Shown one piece after another: positions 5,631-62,830 of a DNA stretch of 64,000 nucleotides; within the stretch, counting starts at the first letter, position 1; each line of letters begins with the position of its first letter. This DNA comes from Fimbriosthenelais zetlandica (lineage: Eukaryota). The notes below the pieces were generated by a model. The model made no database searches. It saw only the letters and a list, made by a program, of their open reading frames with translations, and was not told where the DNA came from. The translations under genes and the position numbers were made by a program. The stretch covers positions 22,630,001-22,694,000 of the forward strand of contig OZ365114.1 in the NCBI GenBank assembly GCA_977030845.1. Direction: 5' to 3'.

Positions 5631-8600
5631 ATATCGGCCACAGCATGGGTTCGTTCAATACATGTTTGTAACCGTATCTGATCTTTTATGACAACCCAAT
5701 ATTAAATCAGGAGCTACGCCAAAGAGCAGCCTTACAATGGGCATGCAATCCCACTCAGCAGCTCTGTTCATTGGATGTGAGTACTATTCGTTAAATATAG
5801 TCCATTAAACTCTTTTAAAATAGTCGGAGGCAAATAGTATGCTTTATTCTACATTTTAGATAACCTTCAAAATGTTTCCAGGTGCAAAGATTGTGAAAAA
5901 TGACTGATGAATGTTATAATAGTACTGAAATAATCATAACTTACTCTGTCCTCTTGAATCCCTGGTATTCTTTAGAAGCCAGCACAGCCGTCAAAAAGGA
6001 GTAGCCTCTCATATATGATGAGGAAGAGTTTGGACAATTTTTGACCAGAGTGTTGGTCAGTCAGGAGCTCTTGTGAATGTTCATTTCACCAGCCAGTCCT
6101 ATTTGGCATTTCTTTGCTCAGCATTCACCAGTGGAGGTGGGAATTGAGACGGGGGAAGGATCCATAGATCATAACTATAGCATTTACTGCCTGCTGTAGC
6201 ATCCCAGTGATGATATGCAGGTCCCTTATTGCCTCATGGTGAGGGGCGTGGAGTGACTGCAACCAAGAGGTGCTCTATGTGCTGGAAACTTTATTACTCC
6301 GATGGCTTTGCTCCTTCCCACTGGCGGAGTGAGCCCTGCTGCAAACTTCAATCGATATGATGATGTAAAAGAAAGAATCTTCAAACAGATTTAATATCAG
6401 TTGTTCAAAGATGGTTGCGGTCTGATAGGTGTAAGCCTATAGCAGTCTGAGGGACACTTGATGTTTCTGAACCACGTATTGTCTTTCCAATGTGCAACAT
6501 GAAGGTGATGTGGTCTTCACCATCATCAGTTGAGTCCATGTGATATGGTAGTTGTACTAATCGATCAATGCTTGTATTTCTTGTATATATCTAAGAGTAA
6601 AGACACTTTTGAGGGGATTTATCTGCCAGTAATGAGCCTCGGGATTGGAGGAGCTCAGCCAGCATCCAACCGTCCCCGCCAATCACCCCGCCTCTCCCAC
6701 GCCCGCCTCTCCCTCTTTTCAATGCTGGATCCGGATAGGTCCCTGATGTCCTTGCCTTGTGATTGGCTAGTTCAGCATTGCAGCTTGTCGTCTGCCTGCA
6801 AAGTACAAGAAGACTGGGAATTATTGATGATATGACACAGCATTTGCTTCATGAGGCAATCAACAAGCATTTGCCAAATCTGAACTGCCATGTGTACGTA
6901 AAAGATTCACACTCCCTTCCATTCGTCCCTCCCTCCCTCCCTCCCTTCCTCCCTTCATTCCACCTGCCTACCTCCCACAGATGATTCCGTTTATATTTTC
7001 CACTTGCCAAAGTAATTGAATGATTGAAAAGAACAATTGGATTATGTGAATTGGCAATGAAGTCATGGATATATATGTTTATTGTCTATTCATCTGATTA
7101 AAATGATCTTAAATGTGCGTAAATGACTATAGATTCCATCCACTCTTCTTCCCTCCCAAACACCCTCCCACCTACAGACCCAACCTCCCTTCTGCCCAGT
7201 CATCTTTAAACCCACCCTCCAACCCATCCATCCTACCACCACCCACCCACACCCACACACACATACACCTTTCTCACAGTTCTATGGTCCAAACCAATTT
7301 TGGCAATTTCGCCATAATACATACAACCACCATATCCTCACCCCACCCACCCTGCTCCCATCAAATGAAAAGGGAAGGGGAAAATGATTGGCAATGAATA
7401 GTGGGAAATGATTGGCAATATCATTTCCAAATTTGACAGAAATTTCATGATGTCATCACTATGTAAAAGCGACCCTGGCATCCAGTCGCCACCTCCCTCC
7501 CCTTCCCCACCCACCCATTCTGCCTCCCACTCCTGCACAAAGATTTATTTTCTTTCCCAATTACCAATTACAATACAAAATTAACGAAAACAAAGCTAAT
7601 TTAATTAGGCGAATGAACAATAAACCCATCGTCTTTAATTCTCTCTTCAATACCTCCCCATTTATGACCGTTCTCTTCCTAAAGAGCCCTTTGATTGAAA
7701 TTATCTCCTTCAATATCCTATCCTTCTAGAATTTCTTGCAATATAGCAAGGCCTTAGCAAATCCCTTGCCCCTTGCAGGTCCTACTTCCTCATGAAGGGC
7801 AGAAGGAGGTGGGTTCCTTGCATGTGTGTACCTTCATAGATAGCCTAAGATCCTTGGCCTTTGTCCTTTTATCAGTTTGCAGGGCATTTATTACTTTGCG
7901 GAGGGAAAGTAGCAGGTGTCATGGCGCACAAAATAACACATTACTTCACACTTCATTTGAATTCACCCACGCACAGAGAATAAACAGTTTGATTCAGATC
8001 CCTGGTGCATTTAATACAGACTGACCATACAGACCTGTGTATGGTAACCTGCTCATAAAACAGTTATGTATTGTCATATTTTATATATTGTATTGTTTCC
8101 TTTGTGAGACCTTCCCAAGATCCGTTTCAGACACAATTTATTTATTTTACATGCCCCCTTGAAACAGGCCACAGGTCATTCTCTTCCAGAGCCATTCAAC
8201 CATTCAGTCTATTCTTGTACCTAGTCCTTGACAATGGTTTATCGTACTGAGTTCTTCCTTCCCTCTCTGTTAAACAATGTAACTATATCTTGGTGGGTAA
8301 TTTCCCCAAAACTGATCGCCCATATCCTGCGTTCATCAACACATATATCAAGAATTAATTGAATGCTCGAAGCCTTCTTTAATGAGATGGGTGATCAAGG
8401 AAAGAACAATCCCTCTATTCTAATTTGGATTAATGAGCAGCATACAAAAATCATGTCGTGAAAAGGGAAGCCCATCCATTCAAGTCATGTTATGACGGTT
8501 CCATGGTTACCAAATATTTAAACAATCATAAAATTGGGCACACATTTCATAGGCCATATCCTTTTTGCAATTTGTATACGGGCAATAAACTTAGCTTTCA

Positions 8601-35353: not shown

Positions 35354-37186
35354 TTATATGTTGAATAGTCTCATGCTTCGCTGGATACTTGTTGTCGGGT
35401 CGTGGTCTGCATCTGACTGAGATACAGCAGACATGGTTAAAGTCTTCGTTCCTCGAGTGGTTATTACATCTTTATCATTGTTTTCTTTCCTACTTTGTTT
35501 CTGAGTCTTTTTTGCAGGGACCTTACCGCCCCCACCCATGCCCTTCAATTTTAGATTTTTGGGTGACATTAATAAATCTCGGTTTTCTGTTTTCACTTGT
35601 TTAGATCTCTGACGTTCTGGTTGTATTGATCCCATGGCAATGGCTGAATCTGCAGCGTCTGAGGATCCCTTCTTGTTGGTGGCTGCAGTAACCTTGTGAG
35701 ATGTACCACTAGATGGTTTGCTATCACTGCCATCTGGTGCTGAAGTGGGTCTTGAGGAAAACTCAGTTGTGAGATAGCTGGCAATGCTCCTTCTCGACTT
35801 GAAGCTAATGTTGCTCAGCCTGGACTTTGACACTGGTTTTGTCATTTTGAGAGAATGACTGGGTGGCTCAGAGGCCTTTCTATGGATCTTATGACCTTTG
35901 CTTTTACCACCTGTGTCCTCACCTGAAGTGGTAGTTGTTGGTGGAATCTTGGAGCTAGCACTTGTAGTGGCTTCTTCCATTACCTCCTCACTACAAGGTC
36001 CCAAGTGTCTCACATTCCTGGCCACCTGTCGTGATTTTCCTTTTAATGATGATTCTGTGAGGTGCTTTTCATTCCTTTGTAAAACACGGAGAAAATCAGG
36101 TGTGAATATACTGTCTGGGGAAAGAATGTCGATAGCTCTCTTTTCACAGAATGATTCAGTGGTATTTTCTAAATCTTCATCTCGTCCTCCTCTCATTTCC
36201 TGCTCTCTTTTCTTTGCTTCAAGGTTAGAATTGTTTAATGTGTTTCGTGCACCCCGTGGACTTTTCAACTCATAAAGAGATTCAGTAGATTCTAAAACAT
36301 AGTCCTGGACACCGTGGCCCTTTTGAGACGTTAATGGGTGGCCATTGTCCGGAGTGTTGACTAACCTTTTCTTGTTTTCACTCCAATGTGGACTTTTTAT
36401 GACAGGTAATGTGATTGTGGTACCGCTGCAGTCAGACGCAGCATAGCTCGATGCTGTCTTATTTTCTTTTCCCTTTTCTACATATTTCCTCATTGTCTTA
36501 TGATCGTAACATTCTCTGGCATCATACTTGCTTTTGTATTCCTTATAAGGCCATCCCTTGACATTAGCCTTGGCTTGGAATTCCCTAAATTTGAATTTTT
36601 GGTGACCAAACTCATATGATGATATAGGAGTGACCCTGTTTCCGTACTCGTCCAAGATATCATAAAATGCTGAAGGTTGAAATTCCTTTTTTATTTTCTT
36701 CTCAGATCTCTTTGACTTGTTGTTTTTTGAAATAGGGATATTAATGTCCCATTTTTGTATTTTGGTGATCCTTACTCTTTGGCTTTTTTTCCAGTTTTGT
36801 TTCAGTGGGGGCAAAACGTGCCTTCCACACACCGACCCCTCCATATTAAGAAACGATTTTGTTCTTTTCAATTTAGTTTCATGATCACTTTTTTCCTTCA
36901 TTAAGGAGCCCGGATCACTTCTGTAGGTCCTTTTCGGTTGATTTCCCTCGTGTTTAATATGCATATTCCTATATATGAGTCCATTTTCCTCATCATCTAT
37001 CCCACCATTTTCTTTTAGCGTGTTCCCTTGTGGCCTTCCTACAATTGCGTTCTTCAAATAAGATTTATTCTGGCTTTCAACCGTGTAAGTTCCCCCTCTT
37101 CCTGAAGGCAGACTGTCGTCTGTTTCCTGGGAAGAGGCAACTAAAGACACATCAGAAAAGGTATCGGTTTCGTCCTCCCCGTCCAT
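35354..37186 (-). CDS. Uncharacterised 610-aa Lys/Ser/Arg-rich, probably disordered protein (single large exon or terminal exon)
   Basis: 1833-bp open frame in AT-rich DNA with AAGATGG start context. A candidate AATAAA lies on the minus strand at 34918-34923. No recognisable domain. Confidence 0.7.
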   Translation of the reverse strand: MDGEDETDTFSDVSLVASSQETDDSLPSGRGGTYTVESQNKSYLKNAIVGRPQGNTLKENGGIDDEENGLIYRNMHIKHEGNQPKRTYRSDPGSLMKEKSDHETKLKRTKSFLNMEGSVCGRHVLPPLKQNWKKSQRVRITKIQKWDINIPISKNNKSKRSEKKIKKEFQPSAFYDILDEYGNRVTPISSYEFGHQKFKFREFQAKANVKGWPYKEYKSKYDARECYDHKTMRKYVEKGKENKTASSYAASDCSGTTITLPVIKSPHWSENKKRLVNTPDNGHPLTSQKGHGVQDYVLESTESLYELKSPRGARNTLNNSNLEAKKREQEMRGGRDEDLENTTESFCEKRAIDILSPDSIFTPDFLRVLQRNEKHLTESSLKGKSRQVARNVRHLGPCSEEVMEEATTSASSKIPPTTTTSGEDTGGKSKGHKIHRKASEPPSHSLKMTKPVSKSRLSNISFKSRRSIASYLTTEFSSRPTSAPDGSDSKPSSGTSHKVTAATNKKGSSDAADSAIAMGSIQPERQRSKQVKTENRDLLMSPKNLKLKGMGGGGKVPAKKTQKQSRKENNDKDVITTRGTKTLTMSAVSQSDADHDPTTSIQRSMRLFNI

Positions 37187-40159
37187 CTTGGTAGGTTATT
37201 GTATTCCGATTGATACAATATTATTGCTTAGCAATACATAATATCAAGCAATATTTCTTAACTGTCTTGAGGGGTAGACTCCATCGACGTAACAAAAAAC
37301 ATAAATACTCCACGCGTCTAGTTGACAGTATTCCATGCAGCTACCAGCTGGGATTCTCCTTGTTCTTTCTGAAAAGATACATTGTATATTGTATTGTGTG
37401 TCGTCTATCCCTTCTATGCCATTATTTGGTTGTAGATTTTCGTACATGACACAGATCTAGCTGTAGCTGAAGTTTGGATTAACGTTAGATTAATTCCAGT
37501 AATCCCATGTCCAAGGCTATTCCATTGGTTATGTTAATACATGTATACTAAAACCTCTGGGTATAATGCTTATGGTTATGATGGACCAGATGGCAATGAG
37601 CTTACTATTAATACTATACATTTAGATTTTAGGATATAAGAGGATTTGAGAAACTCATAGTGCTTTGATCTCTGATCACATGTATGTTCAACTGTTGTTG
37701 TGAATGGTAACACTAACTTAGAATGGCAACGTAGAGAGCAGTGAAAATATTTGTGACGGATTATTTTGTATGCTCTAGAAAATATGGCTTAACGTAAGGA
37801 CATTGATTAAACTGAGGACATTGATTAAACTGCATGTCTAAACGACACGTCAGGTTAATGTTATTTTGTAACTCATCAAACTATCAATGTTAGTGTCACT
37901 TCAAAATGACGACACACTACTCAAAGAATAATCTCAGTTGTGGACACCCAGTTTACAACCATGCCAAATACAGTCAGAAACAGATGATACTCGAAAGAAA
38001 CAGAACACCTTCCTATCAGTATCAGAAAATAGGTGTCATCAGCAGCTAGCTGATTACCATGTGACAGACTTTCCCCATCTGATTTTAATACTATGGATCG
38101 TATCTCAACGAGAAACAAAATCCATATAACCCATCTACTCCAATGGAATAAATTAATGTACGCTGAAACAACATCACAACCACCATGTCCTTTTTAAAAA
38201 TAGTTCCAGTAAACGCCACTGTCGCTATGAGTGGCGTGCTAGTGCAGTGGGTCTTTCCAGTTCCGGTCATTACAATGTTGTACATCTTGGCACGCTTAAG
38301 AACTCGTTAGGGGACAGGAGAACTGAACACAGATTGTCATCAACCCACGATAACACCTACAAAGAAAATGAAACATTTCACAAGTAAATTATATACGGGG
38401 GATCAAAATGATTTAACTCTCATCACAGATTATGGGTAAAGACATTTGGGTTAAATTTTGTGAAACACCCACACAGTTTCTTATTGTCTTGATTTGGAGT
38501 GCTGGAGGGACCGGTGAGACGTGCGATCTGGGTGGTTCACTAACGCCTGAAATGAAGCAATCTTGAGACGGGAGGTGAGTGGAGAAGTAAAGCGGGGAAG
38601 GCGGGAAGGTTGCAATGAGGTGGGAGCATTGAGGGTAAAGACTGGGCCTCAACCTATGCATCTTCAATGAGGCCTCAGATGGGTGGGCCCCTGTTCCAAC
38701 GGAATAGTTCCATCATACCAATCTGAGGAATGTTCTGAAAACTGACATGGTAATTCTCTAGTTCTATTGGCTTTGTGGGCACATTTGCATCTTCCTTCTT
38801 TTCAAACCTAATGAATAGCATCTGTATTCGCTGCTTTGGGACGTGTGCTGCTTTCATTTGCAAAGGAGAAAATTTCTTATGAGCAGCGAAAAACATTTGA
38901 ATTGTCGTTTAATTAATTGACGGGGAAGCAGCTAGGATCCTCCGTGGCCGTGGGGTGATATACTACCGTCGTGCAGCTTTTAATGAGAATTATCTGAGTA
39001 TTATATTACTTACAACAACAGTGAAACACTCCCTTAACACTTAATACATTTTTAGATCACAAAATACATTTATACGCTGGATGGTTGAGAGTGGATGCTT
39101 AGCGAGAAAATTTTAACAGGTCCCTCACATTTTAATGTAATTAATACTGCTGTGGTTATTGTTTATCTTCAACAGATTTCTCATCTGCCTGAAAGTACTG
39201 CGGCATGATTCAAATTTCCCGATTGCATGACAAGTTTCAATTTAGAGAGATACGAATGAATTAGGATCGATTTGAATCACAAGGTTATGAGCTTAGCCTT
39301 TCGAGATGATTAAAGTGAATTACACAATAATGATTGAATGACAATTGAATTTTTCTGTGGGTGGAAACTGTAGACCACTGCCCTTCTGTTATCTACAAAG
39401 TCATTTCACAGATAACGCAGTACCGAGTTAGCAGATTTATAATACATTACGCTGCAAGTGAAGTAAAAAGAAACACGCTTAAAATTGGATATTTGTTACT
39501 AAAAAGGTGTTTTTATATTCAATAACCTTTCCAAGAGCCCGTTGTATGAATTCATCCTCTTCATTTTGGTACAACTGCATGAGGCACCAGTGAATCCAGT
39601 CCAAACAACGATCAACACAGTGCTCTGTACATCATATTGGACAGTTAAAACTGTCTTACATTTAAACTAAGGAAAACATGATGATACTTTGATTTACTTC
39701 TCTATAACCCAGTCGTACTTTTTAGAGCATAACAACAACGTAGGCGATGGAATTTAAAAATCATTCTACTGTAATAGAAATGTACAAATGTGTGAATATA
39801 ATGTACTTGAGTTTTTCCAGCATCACTTCCTAAATACCATATCTGGGATGGACTATAGGTATCAAATTTTGACCATATGAATGCACTATCCTGAAGAAAT
39901 CTGATGGGATTTGAAAATGTCAGGAAAAATCAATCACATCCATTCTGGGGACTTTTTGCATCATTCTAAATAATATTCCTTATAACACTATAAAGACAAT
40001 CTCAATGCCTTCCTTTGACGGGTAAATTATGAAGTCTCTTGTTTCACATCTTCCACATAAAAACGACCAGGTACGCACCAGATATACCATTCTATTAAAT
40101 TCATGTAAATCCTCACACACATGATCACACAGCACCCTTAATAACCATTGATAGAGAAC

Positions 40160-40975
40160 TCATGATAATGACAGAAATATTGTTCCTATTATGAGAGCAG
40201 TTATTAAACACAGGTCTGCACTGGCCCATTTTGATGTGGCCTTATTTTTCCACACACTCCGAGTCCGTGACTTTTGAACTGTTTGCTTACTGGGGGGTTT
40301 AGTGGGTTGTGGAGGAGGTCGACTGGTTTTTTCTTTCGTCCTCGTTTTTGTCCTTTTCGGTGATATTGTCCTGCCACTTTTGGGCTTCAAATTCTTCCTC
40401 CTCGACCCATCCCTGCTACACCTCCCTTTCCACCATTTCTGTCTGAATTTGTCCACCATTCCATTGTCCAGCAATGTTTGTAATGCTCTGTTAATGCGGT
40501 TCTTCAAACGTGAATTTTTCTGCACTGCGAAAGCATAATAAGTCGGGTTTAGAAACTCATCGAACATCATAAGATCACATGGTTTCTGATTCACAAGATA
40601 TTCAGCAAAAGTGCTCTCAAGAAAAAAGACATATTTCCCTTTGGATTCTCTCACTCTCTGTACACCTTTGGCAGAAGTCCATTCAAACACACTCTCATTT
40701 CTTTCGCTCGATTTGAGCATTGTTCTCCACATACGTTTGTAAGTTGTGTCATTTGTGGTTTGAAAAAACCTATAGGTCAGACTGCCTGGAATGCAGCCAT
40801 ATTTAATTTCACTTTGGTTAGCGAGATCTCTTGGGTGGCGGATTGGTGGGGCTTTGCCTGATGATGGCTTGCGCATGATGGTAGCAATGCCTGCCTGCAT
40901 GAAAGGTAAAGTAAAATCCACAACTTCCTCCCTCCATGGCAACACACTCAATGCTCCTGCTGCAACATCAGCTTC
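40160..40975 (-). CDS. Last coding exon of an iGluR-derived ligand-binding-domain protein (end of S1, S2, basic stalk, hydrophobic tail)
   Basis: Acceptor tttcag|GAA GCT at 40975. AMPA/kainate-type motifs REEVVDFTLPF, KYG, MWRTM, GKYVFFLEST, KPCD, KWWKGRC. TGA at 40160-40162. Confidence 0.92.
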   Translation of the reverse strand, partial: EADVAAGALSVLPWREEVVDFTLPFMQAGIATIMRKPSSGKAPPIRHPRDLANQSEIKYGCIPGSLTYRFFQTTNDTTYKRMWRTMLKSSERNESVFEWTSAKGVQRVRESKGKYVFFLESTFAEYLVNQKPCDLMMFDEFLNPTYYAFAVQKNSRLKNRINRALQTLLDNGMVDKFRQKWWKGRCSRDGSRRKNLKPKSGRTISPKRTKTRTKEKTSRPPPQPTKPPSKQTVQKSRTRSVWKNKATSKWASADLCLITALIIGTIFLSLS

Positions 40976-41092
40976 CTGAAATGTAGACAACAATGTTATT
41001 AAAATATCAGTAATTGCTTCTCATGCTTTCTCAAGTTTTACATTCCTATTTGGCTTAATTTATTTGAGAGAAAAGGAATAGATGTCACATAC

Positions 41093-41269
41093 CCCACGCA
41101 TGACTTCTCCGACCATGCCGTTCCAGGAGCCATCTTCTTGTTTTACCCCATAACCTCCCCACGCCACCAGTTTGAGATTGTATGGAGTACGCAGACGGAG
41201 TGCAATCTTTTTAACTAAGTCTGGTATAAAACCTTCAAGGTCCCTTTTCTTCTCCAAAAAAGGAGGATT
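41093..41269 (-). CDS. Internal exon of the iGluR-LBD gene (S1: NPPF...EGFIPDL...YG...WNGMVGEVMRG)
   Basis: Acceptor ttttcctttcag|AAT CCT and donor GGG|gtatgt. 177 bp, phase 0/0, joins in frame to the next exon across a 117-bp intron. Confidence 0.9.
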
Positions 41270-41440
41270 CTGAAAGGAAAAGCAGTTCTTAATGCAAGAG
41301 AAAGACAGTAGTTTTTCTGATTACAATATACAGCTTTAGAGGATCATTTCTCAAAATGGTGGTGAATTTATCTTATCTAAGTAGAAAACAGATTAGTATG
41401 AACAAATCCTTTAATTGCTGGATATTTCCGGACTACTTAC

Positions 41441-41502
41441 TATGAGTGATGTAAAAACCAGGACGCTGGGTACACTTTCTGACTGGGTGTCACTCAGAAC
41501 AG
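41441..41502 (-). CDS. Upstream exon of the iGluR-LBD gene ((A)VLSDTQSESVPSVLVFTSLI)
   Basis: Acceptor tttttcttgcag and donor ATA|gtaagt. Splices in frame to give VLVFTSLI-NPPF, matching the usual S1 start (VVTTILESPY type). The upstream intron is phase 1. Confidence 0.75.
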
Positions 41503-57161: not shown

Positions 57162-58622
57162 ATGCCTGGGAAGTATCCTACTGAGCCAACTCAGATTAGA
57201 ACAAGAAGTGGGGTAAATTTCTCTGAGCGTTTCAATCAAACATACACTGGAGCCAACAATAATACAGGAGACATATCCACAGAGCCTCTAACAGAAGACA
57301 ATCCAGACAATCTCTTACACACTATAGAAACCTACAGCCTTGCATCAGGACCAATACAAGACCAAGTCATCATGGCGGCAGAGGCTTTGGATTTTTTGAC
57401 AAGAAGACCTGCAGAACCTAGGCCTTTCTCAGGTTCCGATGACGAGGATATCAGGGATTTTATCGAAAATTGTGAACTATGGGGAGAATCTTTTGCAGAA
57501 CGTATGGGGCCTGAAATTGTTAAAAGACTCCCAAAGTGGCTAGAAGGGGATGCAAAGAACTGGTACAGAGCATGTGTAAAGGGCCAGGGAGATGAGACAT
57601 GGGAAAGTGTCAAACAGAAACTTTGTAAAATGTATGATTTACTAACAGAGAAAGACAAGAGGGACTTAATGGCAGTTAAAATGCGAGAGTCAGAAGACGT
57701 AAAGGAATTCAACAAAAGGTTCCTCCAGAGGATCAATAAAGCAGGTATCGAGGACCCCGAAACACAAATAAACAGGTACTTGGACAATGTGACTCCCAAA
57801 TATTACAACATTGTGACAAGGGGAAAAGCTACCACACTGCATACAGCCATAGAACTAGTTAACGACTTTAGTAAGGAGGAGAGGCAGAATAAACAAGTTG
57901 ACTTGGAGGATGTCTTTGAGACAATGAAGGCACTGATTGACAAAAAAATAACGAGCACTGTTCAATCAGTAATGCAATCCCAGCAACCACCATTTCAATT
58001 GGAAAGCCAATCTTCTTCCCATTACAAACAACAAATGCCCATGCACTTTCCTCAACAGCTAGCCCAACCAGACATGGTTCCGGTGTGTACCTATTGTAGT
58101 AACAGGGGACATGTGGAAAGGGCATGTAGGCAGAAGATGCGGGCAGAGAACCAACAGAGGAAACAGGCAATAACATGTGGTTATTGCGGACGCATGGGCC
58201 ATCAAGAAGCAGCTTGCAGAAACAGGAAATGTATATGGTGCAGCGGCCAGGGTCACTCACCAGACAACTGTGTCCTTAAGCAACAGATGCAGCAGATGTT
58301 GTCAGCCTGGCAAGGGAACAATATACCTCAAGGTACTAGCCATGGAGACATCCAAGCACCTCAAATGGGTCGCCAACCTCCTAATGTACAGTGCTACATC
58401 TGTTGGCAGTGGGGACACATTTCAAGGAGATGCCCACAAGGTCAATGGGGAGCATACCAACCCATGTGGCAGAACACTCAGCCATCCAGGAACCAGCCAT
58501 CACCTCAAGCACAACAGACAATGCAGCAGCAACACCAGTCTTGGGTAGCTGGCCAACAGGTCAATAATCTCTTGTCACAGGAGGACCAAGAGCCACCAAT
58601 GGAACAGGTTTACCCAAACTAG
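57162..58622 (+). CDS. gag: Gag polyprotein (retrotransposon capsid-like region plus four CCHC zinc knuckles)
   Basis: 486-aa ORF after the PBS. Capsid-like segment (PFSGSDDEDIRDFIENCE...WYR...W) and four CX2CX4HX4C motifs; Gln-rich C-terminus. Confidence 0.95.
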   Translation: MPGKYPTEPTQIRTRSGVNFSERFNQTYTGANNNTGDISTEPLTEDNPDNLLHTIETYSLASGPIQDQVIMAAEALDFLTRRPAEPRPFSGSDDEDIRDFIENCELWGESFAERMGPEIVKRLPKWLEGDAKNWYRACVKGQGDETWESVKQKLCKMYDLLTEKDKRDLMAVKMRESEDVKEFNKRFLQRINKAGIEDPETQINRYLDNVTPKYYNIVTRGKATTLHTAIELVNDFSKEERQNKQVDLEDVFETMKALIDKKITSTVQSVMQSQQPPFQLESQSSSHYKQQMPMHFPQQLAQPDMVPVCTYCSNRGHVERACRQKMRAENQQRKQAITCGYCGRMGHQEAACRNRKCIWCSGQGHSPDNCVLKQQMQQMLSAWQGNNIPQGTSHGDIQAPQMGRQPPNVQCYICWQWGHISRRCPQGQWGAYQPMWQNTQPSRNQPSPQAQQTMQQQHQSWVAGQQVNNLLSQEDQEPPMEQVYPN

Positions 58623-58662
58623 ATAGCCTCCCAACTGGTAAGCGTGGGGGTAGGGAGGCTAT
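58613..58662 (+). promoter_or_regulatory. Putative -1 programmed ribosomal frameshift signal (C CCA AAC plus stem-loop)
   Basis: X XXY YYZ heptamer in gag frame directly before the gag TAG; pol is in the -1 frame. A 10-bp stem ATAGCCTCCC (58623-58632) / GGGAGGCTAT (58653-58662) follows. Confidence 0.8.
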
Positions 58663-58675
58663 AGATAGATCGGTC

Positions 58676-61600
58676 ATGAAAGACTCTAAAGGTAGTGTTA
58701 GTTCTAATGTCACAAGTCACAAAACAAATGATTTGAGATCAGTATGGGGTAACAAGGGACCCGTACTCTACTCAAATGTGAATGACACTAAATTGCCTTA
58801 TACATATGATCTAACAAAAATTGACCCACGCACACATAAAGTAGATGCAGTTTTGCAAGGGATGGGTGTCAGAGTCCTTGTAGATACAGGGGCATCCCTG
58901 TCAATTATTTCTAAAGAAGTTTTCTCTGAGCTCACAGAAGGCAAAAAAGTAAAATTAGGTAAAGGTACAAGGTGCATGGTTGCAGACTCCTCGACTGTGG
59001 AGTCATTGGGAGTGTGGTCCACCAGGATACAAATTGGATCAATCTCTTATGCCATTGAATTCCAGGTTTGGCCTGATGTCTCAGCACACATTATCCTAGG
59101 GACAGATTTCCTCATACAACAAGAAATAGTGATTAGTTATAGGGATGCAGTTACACCAGTAAGGGAACCTATGCAGGTGAAAATAGAAAGGGAGGTGAGT
59201 GTGCCACCACATTCTGAAGCTATTGTAAGAGGCATTGTAACATCAGGAGCGGAATGTCTAGATGGGGACTTATGGTTTGACCCAATATCCTTCGGCACGG
59301 GTTTAGTTGGGGCCGCAGCAGTAGTCACTGTTACAGAGGGTCTCATCCCAATTAGAGTGTGTAACTTCTCCACAGAAATGAGGACAATTAAATTGGGAAG
59401 GAGGGTAGGATGGTTGAACCCAGAAAAAACAAACTGGGTAATGGCAGTAGGACAGGGTGATAGAAAAAAACAGGGATGCAGAGGGCAAGAGGAGGACTGG
59501 CTTCCACAGGTAGATTTGGAAGGGAGCCAGTTACCAGAAGGAGAAAAAGAGAAAGTAAGGCAGTTATGTGGAATGTTTAAGGAGGCGTTTGTAGGTCCAG
59601 ATGGCCAGTTGGGGTGCACTGACCTGGTAGAGCACCACATCAAATTAAAACCAGATACCAAACCAGTGTCCAAAATGCCTTTTCGCCAGTCACCAGTGAT
59701 GAGGAGAATGATGGACGAACTGGTACAGGAACAGACTAGGCAGGGGGTGATTGAGCCATGTTTTGGCTCTGAGTGGGCATCACCTGCATTCTTGGTGGCC
59801 AAGGGAAATGCTGTCCCAGGAGATTCCAGCAAATGGAGAATGGTCATTGATTTCAGGGGCCTCAATGCATGCACTATTCCCCAATTCACACACATCCCCA
59901 GGGTGGATGATATCTTGGACAATGTGGGACAGATTAAGCCAACAATATTTTCTTGTCTGGACCTCCAGTCTGGGTTCCATCAGGTCCCCATTGCTCAGGA
60001 AGATAGAGACATAACAGCCTTCATGACAGCCTCTGGGGAGAAATACCGCTTTACCAAATTACCAATGGGTATGTCAAACAGTCCACGCACATTTCAAATG
60101 CTAATGGATATGGTCTTAGCAGGGTTTAAATATAAGACATGTCTGGTGTATTTGGATGACATTGTTATTTTCTCCCCCGATGTCGACACACATCTGAAAG
60201 ATCTGCAAGATGTGTTTGAACGTCTCATAGAAGCAGGACTAAAGCTCAAACCTTCAAAATGTGTGATGTGTCGGGATAAGTTGAAATACCTTGGCCACAC
60301 TATCTCCAAAAATGGGATAGCACCACATAATGATAATGTCAAACCCATCCAACTGATGAAGCCCCCTACTAAGTTGGTGGAAGTCCAGCAGTATTTGGGT
60401 ATGGTGGGGTACTACAGGCGTTTCATAAAGGGTTATGCCACCCGTGCCAAGCCCCTAACATTGCTGACCAAAAAGGAACAACCTTGGATCTGGGGCGAGG
60501 AACAGCAGAAGGCTTTCGAGGACCTAAGGAAGGCTATCACATCAGCTGAGGTATTAGCCTACCCTGATTTTACTAAAGAATTCACCTTAGGAACTGATGC
60601 TTCAAATGTGGGTATAGGGGCAGAATTGACTCAGATTGATGACAGTGGCAGGCGAAGGCCAGTGGCCTATGCAGGAAAGACCCTAGATGAGGCAGAACAG
60701 AGATACTCAACTACAGAGAAAGAGCTGCTTGCCGTCGCTTGGGCTGTTGACTACTTCAGAGTGTATTTAGAAGGTCGAAAATTTATTCTGAAAACAGACC
60801 ATATGGCTCTAAAATGGCTTCTGAGATCCAACAAACCCAAAGGTAAATTTGCAAGATGGGCTTTGACTTTGCAGGGTTTCAACTACGAAGTACACCATGT
60901 CCCAGGGCCACAGAATGTTGTACCAGATGCCTTATCCAGACTGAAATTTGAAACTTCCCCAGATGAAAGGAACCTTCCAGAGGACTTAACTATCCAGACA
61001 GTGAGTAAAGCTACATTTTCTGGACAAATTAAGGAGGTTTTGCCAGTGAATGCTATCTGTTCCATTACAGAACTTGCAGAAGGAAAAAATAGAGCTGCAG
61101 GCAAGAAAAAAAGAGTTGACAAAGCTCTGCAGTCATTAAATACAGATGTTCAAAAGGAGGGTTTAAATTTAAAAATCATTGCAAGGGAACAGGACAAGGA
61201 TTCCTTAGTGGCAGAAATAATAGACTTCCTCGGAACAGGAGAGCTCCCTGACAACCCAAAAAGAGCTAGGGAAATAGTACTGACAGAACCTGACCATTTC
61301 CTTCATGAGGGAATCCTGTATAGGATGGGTCATACAGGACTAGGGGGAGAGTTGAGGGCACTGATTGTTGTACCAGAAAGCCTAGTTAACCAGATCATCA
61401 CCTTGTACCATGAAGGAGACCTGGGAGGACACCTTGGCCCAGGAAAGATCATTCCTATTTTGAGGAAAAAATATTTCTGGAAAGCAATGAATAAAGATGT
61501 GAGAGCTTACTGCAACTCATGTCATTTATGCAGCTCAACAAAGAGAATGACACATCCCATCCGGGCCCCCATGACTTTGAGGGACCCTGCTCCACGACCT

Positions 61601-62830
61601 TGGGCCATTATCAACATGGATGCCATAGAAAACCTCCCAACAACGAAGAGTGGCAACAAACATATCATAAATGTGGTAGATTACTATTCACGCTACCTGG
61701 TATCCTTTGCCACCCCAGATTTGAAGGCTGAAACCTTGGTAAAGCACTTCTTTTCTAAGGTAGTATTTAGGACAGGAGGAGTCCGCGAAGTGGTTAGTGA
61801 CAATGGGAGTGCTTTCTGTTCGAATGTGTTTGCAGAATTCTGTGCCAGAACAGGCATTAGACAAACTTTCATCACAGCTTTAAACCCAAAGGCATCAGGA
61901 TTAGTTGAGAGAATGAATAGAACAGTGCTAACAATACTACGAAATATAGTCTCTCAGAAACAGGATGACTGGGATGAACACCTACCATTTGTAGAGCACC
62001 TTGTAAACACCAGCCCTGCCTTTGCAACAGGCCAGACTCCATACTTAATGATTCATGGGGTAGAACCTATCCACCCTGTAGAAACAAAACTGATCGATCC
62101 TATGGAGGATGAAAGTAATCTTAGACAGGTTTTTGTGGACCTCTTGGAAAAACAAGAGGCCGTAGGTAAGGCAGGCAAGGAAGTTTTAGAAAAAAACCAA
62201 CAAGAAATGAAAAAAAGATACGACACTCGAACATACAAACCTGATCTAAGTGCAGGAGATATTGTTTACCTCTACTGGCCACGAATCTCTGGCCCAGGTG
62301 TGAAACTGAAACTTGCCAAAATCTACCATGGCCCTATGGTTATCTTCAGGTTCATCACAGACAAGACTGTTGTATTGAAGAGACTACAGGATGGTAAAAT
62401 CATGACAAAGCCTGTAACTGTGGATAGATTGAAAAAGGGTTCACTAAGAGAAGTTACCAAAACATGGGCCCCTTTGACTGGTGACTTTGAGGATGCACAA
62501 GAGTTGGAAGAAATAGATTTTCCAGATGACAGTTTCCTTCCCCATGAAATGGGAGACAAAGGTACAGAAAAAGAGGAGTTGCCCCAGACTGTACCACCCC
62601 AAAGGCCCGAAGCATGTAAATCAAAGTTAGGGAAAGACTTTTTCCCCATCAAGGATATAATAGATATTGCAAAGATCAGTGGTGAAGGGCTACGGTTCAA
62701 AGTCAAATTTAAAGATGGAGACATTAAATGGGTCACTGAAAATTCTCTGAACCAAGCAGCAAAAGACAAATATCTAGACAGAGGATTACAGGAAATAAGG
62801 GAGGTCCCACATCTATTAAGGAGCATGTAA
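58676..62830 (+). CDS. pol: Pol polyprotein: aspartic protease, RT, RNase H, integrase, chromodomain-like tail
   Basis: 1384 aa from the first ATG, with the frame open from 58568. Motifs: DTGAS (protease), YLDD (RT), TDAS (RNase H), HHCC plus D-D-E (integrase), GPM in place of GPY/F. Confidence 0.97.
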   Translation: MKDSKGSVSSNVTSHKTNDLRSVWGNKGPVLYSNVNDTKLPYTYDLTKIDPRTHKVDAVLQGMGVRVLVDTGASLSIISKEVFSELTEGKKVKLGKGTRCMVADSSTVESLGVWSTRIQIGSISYAIEFQVWPDVSAHIILGTDFLIQQEIVISYRDAVTPVREPMQVKIEREVSVPPHSEAIVRGIVTSGAECLDGDLWFDPISFGTGLVGAAAVVTVTEGLIPIRVCNFSTEMRTIKLGRRVGWLNPEKTNWVMAVGQGDRKKQGCRGQEEDWLPQVDLEGSQLPEGEKEKVRQLCGMFKEAFVGPDGQLGCTDLVEHHIKLKPDTKPVSKMPFRQSPVMRRMMDELVQEQTRQGVIEPCFGSEWASPAFLVAKGNAVPGDSSKWRMVIDFRGLNACTIPQFTHIPRVDDILDNVGQIKPTIFSCLDLQSGFHQVPIAQEDRDITAFMTASGEKYRFTKLPMGMSNSPRTFQMLMDMVLAGFKYKTCLVYLDDIVIFSPDVDTHLKDLQDVFERLIEAGLKLKPSKCVMCRDKLKYLGHTISKNGIAPHNDNVKPIQLMKPPTKLVEVQQYLGMVGYYRRFIKGYATRAKPLTLLTKKEQPWIWGEEQQKAFEDLRKAITSAEVLAYPDFTKEFTLGTDASNVGIGAELTQIDDSGRRRPVAYAGKTLDEAEQRYSTTEKELLAVAWAVDYFRVYLEGRKFILKTDHMALKWLLRSNKPKGKFARWALTLQGFNYEVHHVPGPQNVVPDALSRLKFETSPDERNLPEDLTIQTVSKATFSGQIKEVLPVNAICSITELAEGKNRAAGKKKRVDKALQSLNTDVQKEGLNLKIIAREQDKDSLVAEIIDFLGTGELPDNPKRAREIVLTEPDHFLHEGILYRMGHTGLGGELRALIVVPESLVNQIITLYHEGDLGGHLGPGKIIPILRKKYFWKAMNKDVRAYCNSCHLCSSTKRMTHPIRAPMTLRDPAPRPWAIINMDAIENLPTTKSGNKHIINVVDYYSRYLVSFATPDLKAETLVKHFFSKVVFRTGGVREVVSDNGSAFCSNVFAEFCARTGIRQTFITALNPKASGLVERMNRTVLTILRNIVSQKQDDWDEHLPFVEHLVNTSPAFATGQTPYLMIHGVEPIHPVETKLIDPMEDESNLRQVFVDLLEKQEAVGKAGKEVLEKNQQEMKKRYDTRTYKPDLSAGDIVYLYWPRISGPGVKLKLAKIYHGPMVIFRFITDKTVVLKRLQDGKIMTKPVTVDRLKKGSLREVTKTWAPLTGDFEDAQELEEIDFPDDSFLPHEMGDKGTEKEELPQTVPPQRPEACKSKLGKDFFPIKDIIDIAKISGEGLRFKVKFKDGDIKWVTENSLNQAAKDKYLDRGLQEIREVPHLLRSM

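What the first reader, a model, noticed from the sequence alone, without database searches (positions are those of the whole stretch)
40160..41502. Natural pore-less glutamate-receptor ligand-binding domain: candidate glutamate-binding decoy protein
Seen in sequence: within one exon, the end of S1 (FMQAGIATIMRKP) is followed after only SSGKAP (40847-40864) by the start of S2 (PIRHPRDLANQSEIKYG). Established: in iGluRs the M1, pore-loop and M3 segment (over 100 aa) lies exactly here, and the S1S2 crystallography constructs replace it with a short linker. Because S1 and S2 are contiguous in the genome, pore exons cannot be spliced in. The frame is intact, with clean GT-AG introns and the conserved S2 cysteine pair (KPCD ... 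GRC). Inference: this is a functional channel-less, iGluR-derived binding protein, conceptually a glutamate counterpart of molluscan acetylcholine-binding protein. It differs from vertebrate kainate-binding proteins, which keep their membrane segments. I do not know of a described family but cannot search.
Basis: partly seen in the sequence, partly recalled or inferred. Interest (0 to 1): 0.88.

Follow-up and report, generated by a model that had tools for sequence, protein, structure and literature searches.

The report
Channel-less, membrane-tethered glutamate-receptor binding domain
This is a real, selectively maintained gene, probably in an annelid worm, that encodes only the ligand-binding clamshell of a glutamate-receptor channel, with no pore and a lipid-anchor-like tail, and it belongs to a sizeable family for which I found no published description.

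Summary
On the minus strand, one exon (40160-40975) reads from the end of S1 through a six-residue linker (SSGKAP, 40847-40864) into S2, where channel-forming iGluRs carry 100-150 residues of M1-pore-M3. It is not an assembly artefact or pseudogene. The same junction occurs in at least seven other genomes and in Capitella teleta CAPTEDRAFT_115399. LBD dN/dS is 0.04-0.07. The Arg/Glu amino-acid-binding pair and the S2 cysteine pair are kept.

The protein is channel-less and under selection. However, S2 is followed by a disordered stalk and a 17-residue hydrophobic C-terminus with nothing after it, which looks like a GPI-attachment signal. It is therefore probably surface-tethered, not a free decoy like AChBP. 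The ligand need not be glutamate, because the first position of the alphaF "GST" motif is Ser/Thr.

It is also not a one-off. Among the 150 best of 4,123 relatives, about 70 lack the pore; in the 120-row tree set, 42 of 48 fall into three clades. The named members are annelid "hypothetical proteins" (Capitella, Helobdella). One member is a polyadenylated mRNA contig.

Nine literature searches found no description; one major iGluR phylogeny discarded sequences lacking the pore motif.

The 5' signal-peptide exon of this gene was not found, and no RNA runs could be listed.

The parts
41441..41502 (-). Exon A: mature N-terminal peptide and first beta-strand of S1 (..VLSDTQSESVPSVLVFTSLI). It begins in phase 1 after an AG acceptor, so at least one upstream exon is missing.
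   Evidence: Conserved in L002 at 7055-7219. It corresponds to exon 2 of Capitella CAPTEDRAFT_147793.
41093..41269 (-). Exon B: the main part of S1 (NPPFLEKK...GMVGEVMRG).
   Evidence: Pfam Lig_chan-Glu_bd, E 4.7e-12. It is 84% identical in protein to L002 and 78% identical in DNA to L003.
40865..40975 (-). Start of exon C: the end of S1, including the ligand-binding Arg (GluA2 R485 equivalent).
40847..40864 (-). Six-residue natural S1-S2 linker (SSGKAP), in the place of M1, pore loop and M3.
   Evidence: The S1-S2 gap is 2-14 residues in almost all pore-less relatives and mostly 100-150 residues in pore-bearing ones.
40418..40846 (-). S2 lobe up to WWKGRC. It contains the T655, E705 and Y732 equivalents and the C718/C773 cysteine pair.
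   Evidence: pN is 0.11-0.17 against pS 0.73-0.85.
40214..40417 (-). Basic stalk rich in Ser, Thr and Pro: 65 residues, pI about 12, 22 Lys+Arg, with a conserved QKSRTRSVW motif.
   Evidence: The corresponding region of the P0030 model has low confidence. dN/dS is 0.13-0.32.
40163..40213 (-). 17-residue hydrophobic C-terminus (LCLITALIIGTIFLSLS) preceded by small residues (ATS..ASAD). It looks like a GPI-attachment signal, or alternatively a tail anchor.
   Evidence: Nothing follows the hydrophobic run.
40160..40162 (-). Stop codon.

Best explanation
The locus is the 3' three-quarters of a functional gene, probably of four exons, in what looks like an annelid genome. It encodes a predicted signal peptide (exon not found), a complete iGluR-type bilobed ligand-binding domain with S1 joined directly to S2, a disordered basic stalk, and a C-terminal hydrophobic signal that most likely specifies a GPI anchor. 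Shown: the protein has no pore, no M4/cytoplasmic domain and no detectable amino-terminal domain. The LBD is under strong purifying selection and keeps the residues that clamp the alpha-carboxylate (Arg) and alpha-amino group (Glu) of an amino acid. It belongs to a multi-clade family of similar proteins. Inferred: the protein sits on the outer face of the plasma membrane and closes its clamshell on a free alpha-amino acid, possibly glycine, serine or another small ligand rather than specifically glutamate. Because it cannot conduct ions, it would act either as a tethered local sink or decoy for that ligand (my estimate about 40%) or as a ligand-dependent co-receptor that signals through a partner (about 35%). 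A shed soluble form is a further possibility (about 15%).
For: Contiguous S1-linker-S2 in one exon with GT-AG introns. Pfam shows LBD domains and no Lig_chan domain. The sequence aligns without interruption to GluA2 S1S2 constructs, E 1.6e-40. tblastn with 47 full-length iGluRs hits only 40.2-41.3 kb in the whole window, so there are no pore or ATD exons. Seven orthologue-type exons at 42-74% identity share the same junction, stalk and tail, and the three exons are conserved in L002 and L003. LBD dN/dS is 0.04-0.07. The R485, E705, T655, Y732, C718 and C773 equivalents are kept throughout the 12-member clade. The AlphaFold model of clade member P0030 has pLDDT 87, and its top Foldseek hits are GluA2 LBDs with target TM-scores of 0.86-0.92 and rmsd about 2 A. 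That model is closer to eukaryotic iGluRs (TM 0.70-0.73) than to bacterial SBPs (TM 0.54-0.58). Most pore-less relatives end in a hydrophobic C-terminus with few or no residues after it. Relatives with complete N-termini have a signal peptide directly before S1. Capitella CAPTEDRAFT_147793 has a signal-peptide-only exon 1 about 4 kb upstream and the same terminal-exon structure. A family member, P0124, is present as a polyadenylated mRNA contig. Three N-glycosylation sequons lie in the LBD.
Against: There is no transcript evidence for this gene: no sequencing runs were listed. Its first exon and signal peptide were not found. GPI anchoring is inferred from simple sequence heuristics only. No ligand has been tested, and three pocket positions differ from glutamate-selective receptors (P478A, G653S, S654L). 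The basic character of the stalk is not conserved across the whole clade. The structural model is of a relative, not of the window protein itself.
Confidence: 0.72

Rival explanations
1. One reading: a freely secreted, soluble glutamate-binding decoy, functionally equivalent to molluscan AChBP.
For: The LBD is intact and under selection. The stalk carries dibasic sites (RRK, KRT) that could allow proteolytic release, and GPI proteins can be shed. A few family members (P0126, P0160) end without a hydrophobic tail.
Against: The hydrophobic C-terminus is conserved in this clade and in most pore-less relatives. The alphaF motif S-L-T lacks the Gly found in all glutamate-selective receptors surveyed in PMC13648236.
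Confidence: 0.13
2. A decaying fragment or pseudogene of a tandemly duplicated iGluR, or an assembly or annotation artefact in which the pore exons were lost.
For: No RNA evidence could be obtained, and the 5' exon was not identified. Transposable elements are close by: a Ty3/gypsy element at 57-63 kb.
Against: The frame is open and the splice sites intact. LBD dN/dS is 0.04-0.07 while synonymous sites are saturated. The same architecture occurs in independent assemblies of at least eight other genomes (seven exon-C clusters plus Capitella CAPTEDRAFT_115399). Full-length relatives with a signal peptide exist, and one is a polyadenylated mRNA.
Confidence: 0.03
3. A single-pass or tail-anchored membrane protein, with the hydrophobic end being a remnant of M4, that joins pore-forming iGluR or IR complexes as an accessory ligand-binding subunit.
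For: A hydrophobic segment follows S2, as M4 does in iGluRs. The whole LBD surface, not only the pocket, is highly conserved, which could reflect protein-protein contacts. The family has diversified into clades, including one that lost the amino-acid triad as many chemosensory IRs have.
Against: The hydrophobic run is only 17 residues, sits 65 residues after S2 and ends the protein with no cytoplasmic residues. This is typical of GPI signals rather than of M4 followed by a C-terminal domain. No homology to M4 was detected.
Confidence: 0.12

Closest known systems
Engineered S1S2 ligand-binding cores of AMPA receptors (GluA2 S1S2, e.g. PDB 1FTK/1FTJ)
   Same: Both join S1 directly to S2 by a short linker at the same position. 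The alignment is uninterrupted (E 1.6e-40). The fold of a clade member matches with target TM-scores of 0.86-0.92. The Arg/Glu ligand clamp and the disulfide cysteines are the same.
   Different: This protein is natural and genomically encoded, with introns. It carries a 65-residue stalk and a hydrophobic C-terminal signal. Its pocket differs at the P478, G653 and S654 equivalents.
Vertebrate kainate-binding proteins (frog, chick, goldfish KBPs; 'glutamate receptor U1')
   Same: Both are iGluR relatives that lack the amino-terminal domain and are not known to conduct current by themselves (established knowledge). The Atlas structure search lists a 'glutamate receptor U1' cluster among the nearest folds.
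   Different: KBPs keep the Lig_chan membrane segments (PF00060 in 100% of that cluster). This protein has none.
Molluscan acetylcholine-binding protein (AChBP)
   Same: The concept is the same: the extracellular ligand-binding part of a ligand-gated ion channel existing as a separate, channel-less protein.
   Different: The fold and superfamily are unrelated (Cys-loop). AChBP is a secreted soluble pentamer. This protein has a membrane-anchor-like tail, and its oligomeric state is unknown.
Bacterial periplasmic amino-acid-binding proteins (SBP family 3)
   Same: Both have a contiguous bilobed PBP type II fold and match Pfam SBP_bac_3.
   Different: The similarity is much more distant (TM 0.54-0.58 against 0.70-0.73 for animal iGluRs). 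The gene has spliceosomal introns and groups with pore-bearing animal iGluRs in the tree, so it derives from an iGluR rather than from a bacterial gene.
Annelid hypothetical proteins CAPTEDRAFT_115399, CAPTEDRAFT_147793 (Capitella teleta) and HELRODRAFT_185259/167133 (Helobdella robusta)
   Same: They share the same pore-less architecture. CAPTEDRAFT_115399 is in the same well-supported clade (100/99). CAPTEDRAFT_147793 shares the intron position before the (E/V)AD motif and the single terminal exon.
   Different: They are only 25-39% identical to each other across clades. Clade 3 has lost the Glu and Thr of the amino-acid triad. All carry only automatic names.

Membership tests
iGluR superfamily ligand-binding domain (S1S2, PBP type II) | Significant match to the Lig_chan-Glu_bd / SBP_bac_3 profiles and to solved iGluR LBDs. 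| tested here: met
   Pfam scores are above the gathering thresholds. GluA2 S1S2 matches at E 1.6e-40.
iGluR superfamily ligand-binding domain (S1S2, PBP type II) | Bilobed clamshell fold superposable on GluA2 LBD. | tested here: met
   The model of clade member P0030 has pLDDT 87, target TM-scores of 0.86-0.92 and rmsd about 2 A. The window protein itself was not modelled.
iGluR superfamily ligand-binding domain (S1S2, PBP type II) | Conserved Arg (R485) and acidic residue (E705) that bind the alpha-amino-acid, plus the C718-C773 disulfide pair. | tested here: met
   All are present in the window protein and invariant in its 12-member clade.
Ionotropic glutamate receptor (ion channel subunit) | M1, pore loop and M3 (Pfam Lig_chan, SYTANLAAF motif) inserted between S1 and S2. 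| tested here: not met
   Only six residues lie between S1 and S2. There is no Lig_chan hit and no pore exon in the 64 kb window.
Ionotropic glutamate receptor (ion channel subunit) | M4 helix followed by a cytoplasmic C-terminal domain. | tested here: not met
   A 17-residue hydrophobic end lies 65 residues after S2, with nothing after it.
Ionotropic glutamate receptor (ion channel subunit) | Amino-terminal domain (ANF_receptor). | tested here: inconclusive
   No ATD-like exon was found in the 22.5 kb upstream, and relatives have a signal peptide directly before S1. However, the 5' exon of this gene is unidentified.
Kainate-binding proteins | ATD-less iGluR homologue that retains the membrane segments. 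| tested here: not met
   There are no membrane segments between S1 and S2.
AChBP-type secreted decoy (functional class, not homology) | Soluble secreted protein without a membrane anchor. | tested here: not met
   A conserved hydrophobic C-terminal signal is present. Shedding cannot be excluded.
AChBP-type secreted decoy (functional class, not homology) | Binds the transmitter and lowers its local concentration. | not testable with these tools
   This needs binding assays and physiology.
GPI-anchored surface proteins | C-terminal signal: small omega-site residues, a short spacer, and a hydrophobic stretch of 15-20 residues ending the protein. | tested here: inconclusive
   The pattern is present by simple heuristics (A-T-S ... 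A-S-A-D followed by 17 hydrophobic residues). No dedicated predictor or experiment was available.
GPI-anchored surface proteins | N-terminal signal peptide. | tested here: inconclusive
   It was not found for the window gene. It is present in full-length relatives P0042, P0047, P0069 and P0102.
Bacterial SBP family 3 (contaminant or horizontal transfer) | Closest relatives are bacterial, and the gene is intronless. | tested here: not met
   The closest relatives are animal iGluRs, and the gene has GT-AG introns.

The most novel reading that the evidence does not exclude
Annelids, and possibly other lophotrochozoans, possess a previously undescribed and diversified family of GPI-anchored, channel-less iGluR ligand-binding-domain proteins. 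It has at least three clades. Two keep the amino-acid-binding triad and one is retuned to other ligands. These proteins would act as surface-tethered transmitter or chemosensory binding proteins, either as buffers or as ligand-dependent co-receptors. They would be a natural counterpart of the crystallographers' S1S2 construct and a new way of using a neurotransmitter-receptor domain without a channel.
Probability: 0.5. Interest if true: 0.8.

Novelty: new variant of a known kind. Interest (0 to 1): 0.7.

Why it matters
iGluR ligand-binding domains are normally studied as parts of channels, and isolated S1S2 cores were known to me only as engineered constructs. A conserved natural version with a membrane tether raises three points.

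- The domain has an independent, selectable function outside ion conduction.
- These proteins offer ready-made soluble-domain targets for finding the ligands of invertebrate iGluR-type pockets.
- They point to an unrecognised layer of amino-acid signalling or chemosensation in annelids.

The case also exposes a blind spot. Surveys that require the pore motif, such as the SYTANLAAF filter in PMC6307864, remove this family by design.

Tried and rejected
- RNA evidence. Two run searches listed no runs, so read laying could not be used.
- Finding exon 1. Low-stringency tblastn between the upstream regions of the window and L002 gave only noise. A scan for ATG, hydrophobic core and a phase-1 GT donor gave three window candidates and one L002 candidate with no convincing similarity, so no call was made. 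L003 and L004 do not reach exon A. The Capitella orthologue is cut off by an assembly gap.
- Pseudogene or artefact reading. Rejected on dN/dS and multi-genome conservation.
- Bacterial origin or contamination. Rejected on introns and on closer similarity to animal iGluRs.
- Single origin of pore loss. Not resolved. The free tree needs 8 changes and its well-supported branches force at least 4, but holding the three main clades together is not rejected (AU p = 0.43). Some scattered cases may be gene-model artefacts.
- Taxonomic range beyond annelids. Could not be established. Most relatives are unnamed Logan, ENA or JGI contigs. An Atlas lead to a chordate cluster scored only 0.88.
- Word-indexed searches with P0069 and with alignment A2 added little.
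- Literature. Nine full-text searches, plus reading of five papers, found no description of the family.

Full report
**Observation.**

The feature lies on the minus strand. Reading 41700 to 40900 in reverse complement shows three exons with canonical boundaries:
- Exon A, 41441-41502. Its acceptor is ...ttcttgcag and its donor is gtaagt.
- Exon B, 41093-41269. Its donor is gtatgt.
- Exon C, 40160-40975. It ends in a stop codon.

Exon A starts in phase 1, so at least one upstream coding exon is missing. The three exons give 350 residues.

S2 then begins (PIRHPRDLANQSEIKYG...) in the same open frame.

Pfam finds Lig_chan-Glu_bd and SBP_bac_3 above their thresholds but no Lig_chan pore domain. 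Against PDB sequences the best matches are the engineered GluA2 S1S2 constructs (1FTK, E 1.6e-40). The alignment runs straight across their artificial linker.

**Is it real?**

- A word-indexed search with exon C, restricted by design to proteins of similar length, returned seven clusters at 42-74% identity. All have the same short junction, a long stalk and a hydrophobic C-terminus. They are single-exon ORF calls on eukaryotic genomic contigs.
- In a 20.8 kb locus from another genome (L002) all three exons are conserved in order. The closer L003/L004 contigs conserve exons B and C. An assembly collapse is therefore excluded.
- Nei-Gojobori estimates on exon C show selection on the LBD. pN is 0.11-0.17 against pS 0.73-0.85 (saturated). 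Omega is 0.04-0.07 where it can be computed. The stalk and tail give 0.13-0.32. This is strong purifying selection, not a pseudogene.
- tblastn of 47 full-length iGluRs (800-1100 residues, with ATD and pore) against the whole window hits only 40.2-41.3 kb. There are no pore exons and no detectable ATD exons within the 64 kb window.

**What the protein looks like.**

After WWKGRC comes a 65-residue stalk. It has pI about 12, 22 Lys+Arg, 26 Ser/Thr/Pro, and a conserved QKSRTRSVW motif. The protein then ends in LCLITALIIGTIFLSLS, which is 17 hydrophobic residues preceded by small residues, with nothing after them.

This matches the pattern of a GPI-attachment signal. A tail anchor is the alternative. 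It is not an M4 helix followed by a cytoplasmic domain. Three N-glycosylation sequons lie in the LBD.

I aligned the protein to a GluA S1S2 sequence present in the database (P0043). The window protein and its clade compare as follows:
- Kept: the R485, T655, E705 and Y732 equivalents, an aromatic residue at 450, and the C718/C773 pair.
- Changed: T480 to Ser, P478 to Ala, G653 to Ser/Thr, and S654 to Leu/Gln.

So the clamp for an alpha-amino acid is intact, but the alphaF "GST" motif is S-L-T. In a 2026 functional survey every glutamate-selective receptor had Gly at the first of these positions. Glycine-selective and other-ligand receptors did not (PMC13648236). Calling the ligand glutamate is therefore unsafe.

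An AlphaFold model of the closest spliced relative (P0030, using alignment A2) has mean pLDDT 87. The stalk has low confidence and the C-terminal segment is helical. Its best Foldseek matches are GluA2 LBD structures, with target TM-scores of 0.86-0.92 and rmsd about 2 A. In the ESM Atlas it is closer to animal iGluRs (TM 0.70-0.73) than to bacterial binding proteins (TM 0.54-0.58).

**It is a family.**

An exhaustive profile search of 1.84 billion representatives gave 4,123 hits. I measured the distance between the S1-end and S2 profiles in all 168 fetched proteins, including the best 150. The distribution is bimodal:
- In about 70 proteins the gap is 2-14 residues.
- In pore-bearing receptors it is mostly 100-150 residues.
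- Most of the short-gap proteins end in a hydrophobic tail.

One short-gap entry (P0043) is an engineered GluA construct and was excluded.

Full-length members such as P0042, P0047, P0069 and P0102 read signal peptide, S1, short linker, S2, hydrophobic tail, in 300-340 residues.

Named members are annelid "hypothetical proteins":
- CAPTEDRAFT_115399 and CAPTEDRAFT_147793 from Capitella teleta.
- HELRODRAFT_185259 and HELRODRAFT_167133 from Helobdella robusta.

An earlier follow-up in this scan also judged the genome annelid-like.

One member (P0124) sits on a contig that ends in AATAAA followed by an 18-residue poly(A) run. That contig is therefore an mRNA.

**Phylogeny of the pore-less proteins.**

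I built a tree from 120 S1-end plus S2 segments.
- The window protein falls in a 12-member pore-less clade with 100/99 support, which includes CAPTEDRAFT_115399.
- Two further pore-less groups appear. One has 16 members, is well supported (95/91) and includes CAPTEDRAFT_147793. The other has 14 members and includes the Helobdella pair. It is a clade in the quick tree (SH-aLRT 83) but is split by the midpoint root of the careful tree.
- The free tree needs 8 changes of architecture, and its well-supported branches force at least 4.
- Holding the three main clades together is not rejected (AU p = 0.43). One or several pore losses remain possible.
- The 16-member clade has replaced E705 by Pro and T480 by aromatic residues. 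It has probably left amino-acid ligands, as many IRs have.

**Shared gene structure.**

Gene structure supports kinship between the clades. In CAPTEDRAFT_147793:
- exon 1 encodes only the signal peptide and lies about 4 kb upstream;
- the last exon starts at the same position (before V-A-D-F, against E-A-D-V here);
- that last exon carries the S1 end, the junction, S2 and the tail.

This is also the best guide to the missing 5' end of the window gene. It is probably a short signal-peptide exon some kilobases upstream.

**What could not be done.**

- No sequencing runs were listed for this stretch, so there is no transcript evidence for this gene.
- The first exon could not be identified by comparison or by a signal-peptide/donor scan.
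- GPI anchoring rests on heuristics.
- The taxonomic range beyond annelids is unknown.

**Literature.**

Nine full-text searches found no description of a channel-less or GPI-anchored iGluR LBD family and no mention of the named annelid proteins. [quoted passage not shown] That filter would remove this family. The library covers open-access papers and bioRxiv only, so a description elsewhere cannot be excluded.

**Verdict.**

It needs correcting on three points:
- The protein is probably membrane-tethered, not soluble.
- Its ligand is an alpha-amino acid of unknown identity.
- It is one of a diversified annelid family, not a singular case.

Mechanistically, I infer a surface-tethered binding module that acts as a local sink or as a co-receptor. 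Nothing in the data distinguishes between these two roles.

Noticed in passing
window 57162-62830 (+): A Ty3/gypsy retrotransposon with long open gag (486 aa) and pol (1384 aa: protease, RT, RNase H, integrase) reading frames. It lies upstream of the gene and looks like a recent insertion.
   Followed up: partly
window 35354-37186 (-); L002 15616-17922: An intronless 610-residue ORF about 3 kb downstream of the gene has no Pfam or PDB match. It is 26% identical over 493 residues to a 752-residue ORF that lies about 5 kb downstream of the orthologous gene in L002. It could be a conserved neighbour or copies of an unclassified mobile element.
   Followed up: partly
window 39496-39598 and 38607-38747: Two single-copy patches downstream of the stop codon are 72-75% identical to L001, L003 and L004. 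That is as conserved as the coding exon, although synonymous sites are saturated. They may be 3' UTR elements or an unannotated exon. One frame of the first patch is open.
   Followed up: partly
The repeated odd anticodons suggest tRNA-derived repeats rather than working genes.
   Followed up: no
P0024 (989 aa, representative library): One predicted protein holds two complete ATD-less iGluR units in tandem, each with signal-like start, S1, pore, S2 and M4. It is probably a fused gene model of two tandem genes.
   Followed up: no
P0102, P0062, P0149 and the other clade-3 proteins: A 16-member pore-less clade has replaced the alpha-amino-binding Glu by Pro and T480 by aromatic residues while keeping the Arg. 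This points to ligands other than amino acids, in parallel with chemosensory IRs.
   Followed up: partly
Helobdella robusta ESO10625.1 / ESO10626.1: The two leech family members have consecutive accession numbers and sit on the same 5.1 Mb scaffold. This suggests a tandem gene pair.
   Followed up: no
P0043 (258 aa): The public protein collection contains an engineered GluA S1S2 construct (GT linker). It ranks among natural pore-less hits and must be excluded from any survey of this family.
   Followed up: yes
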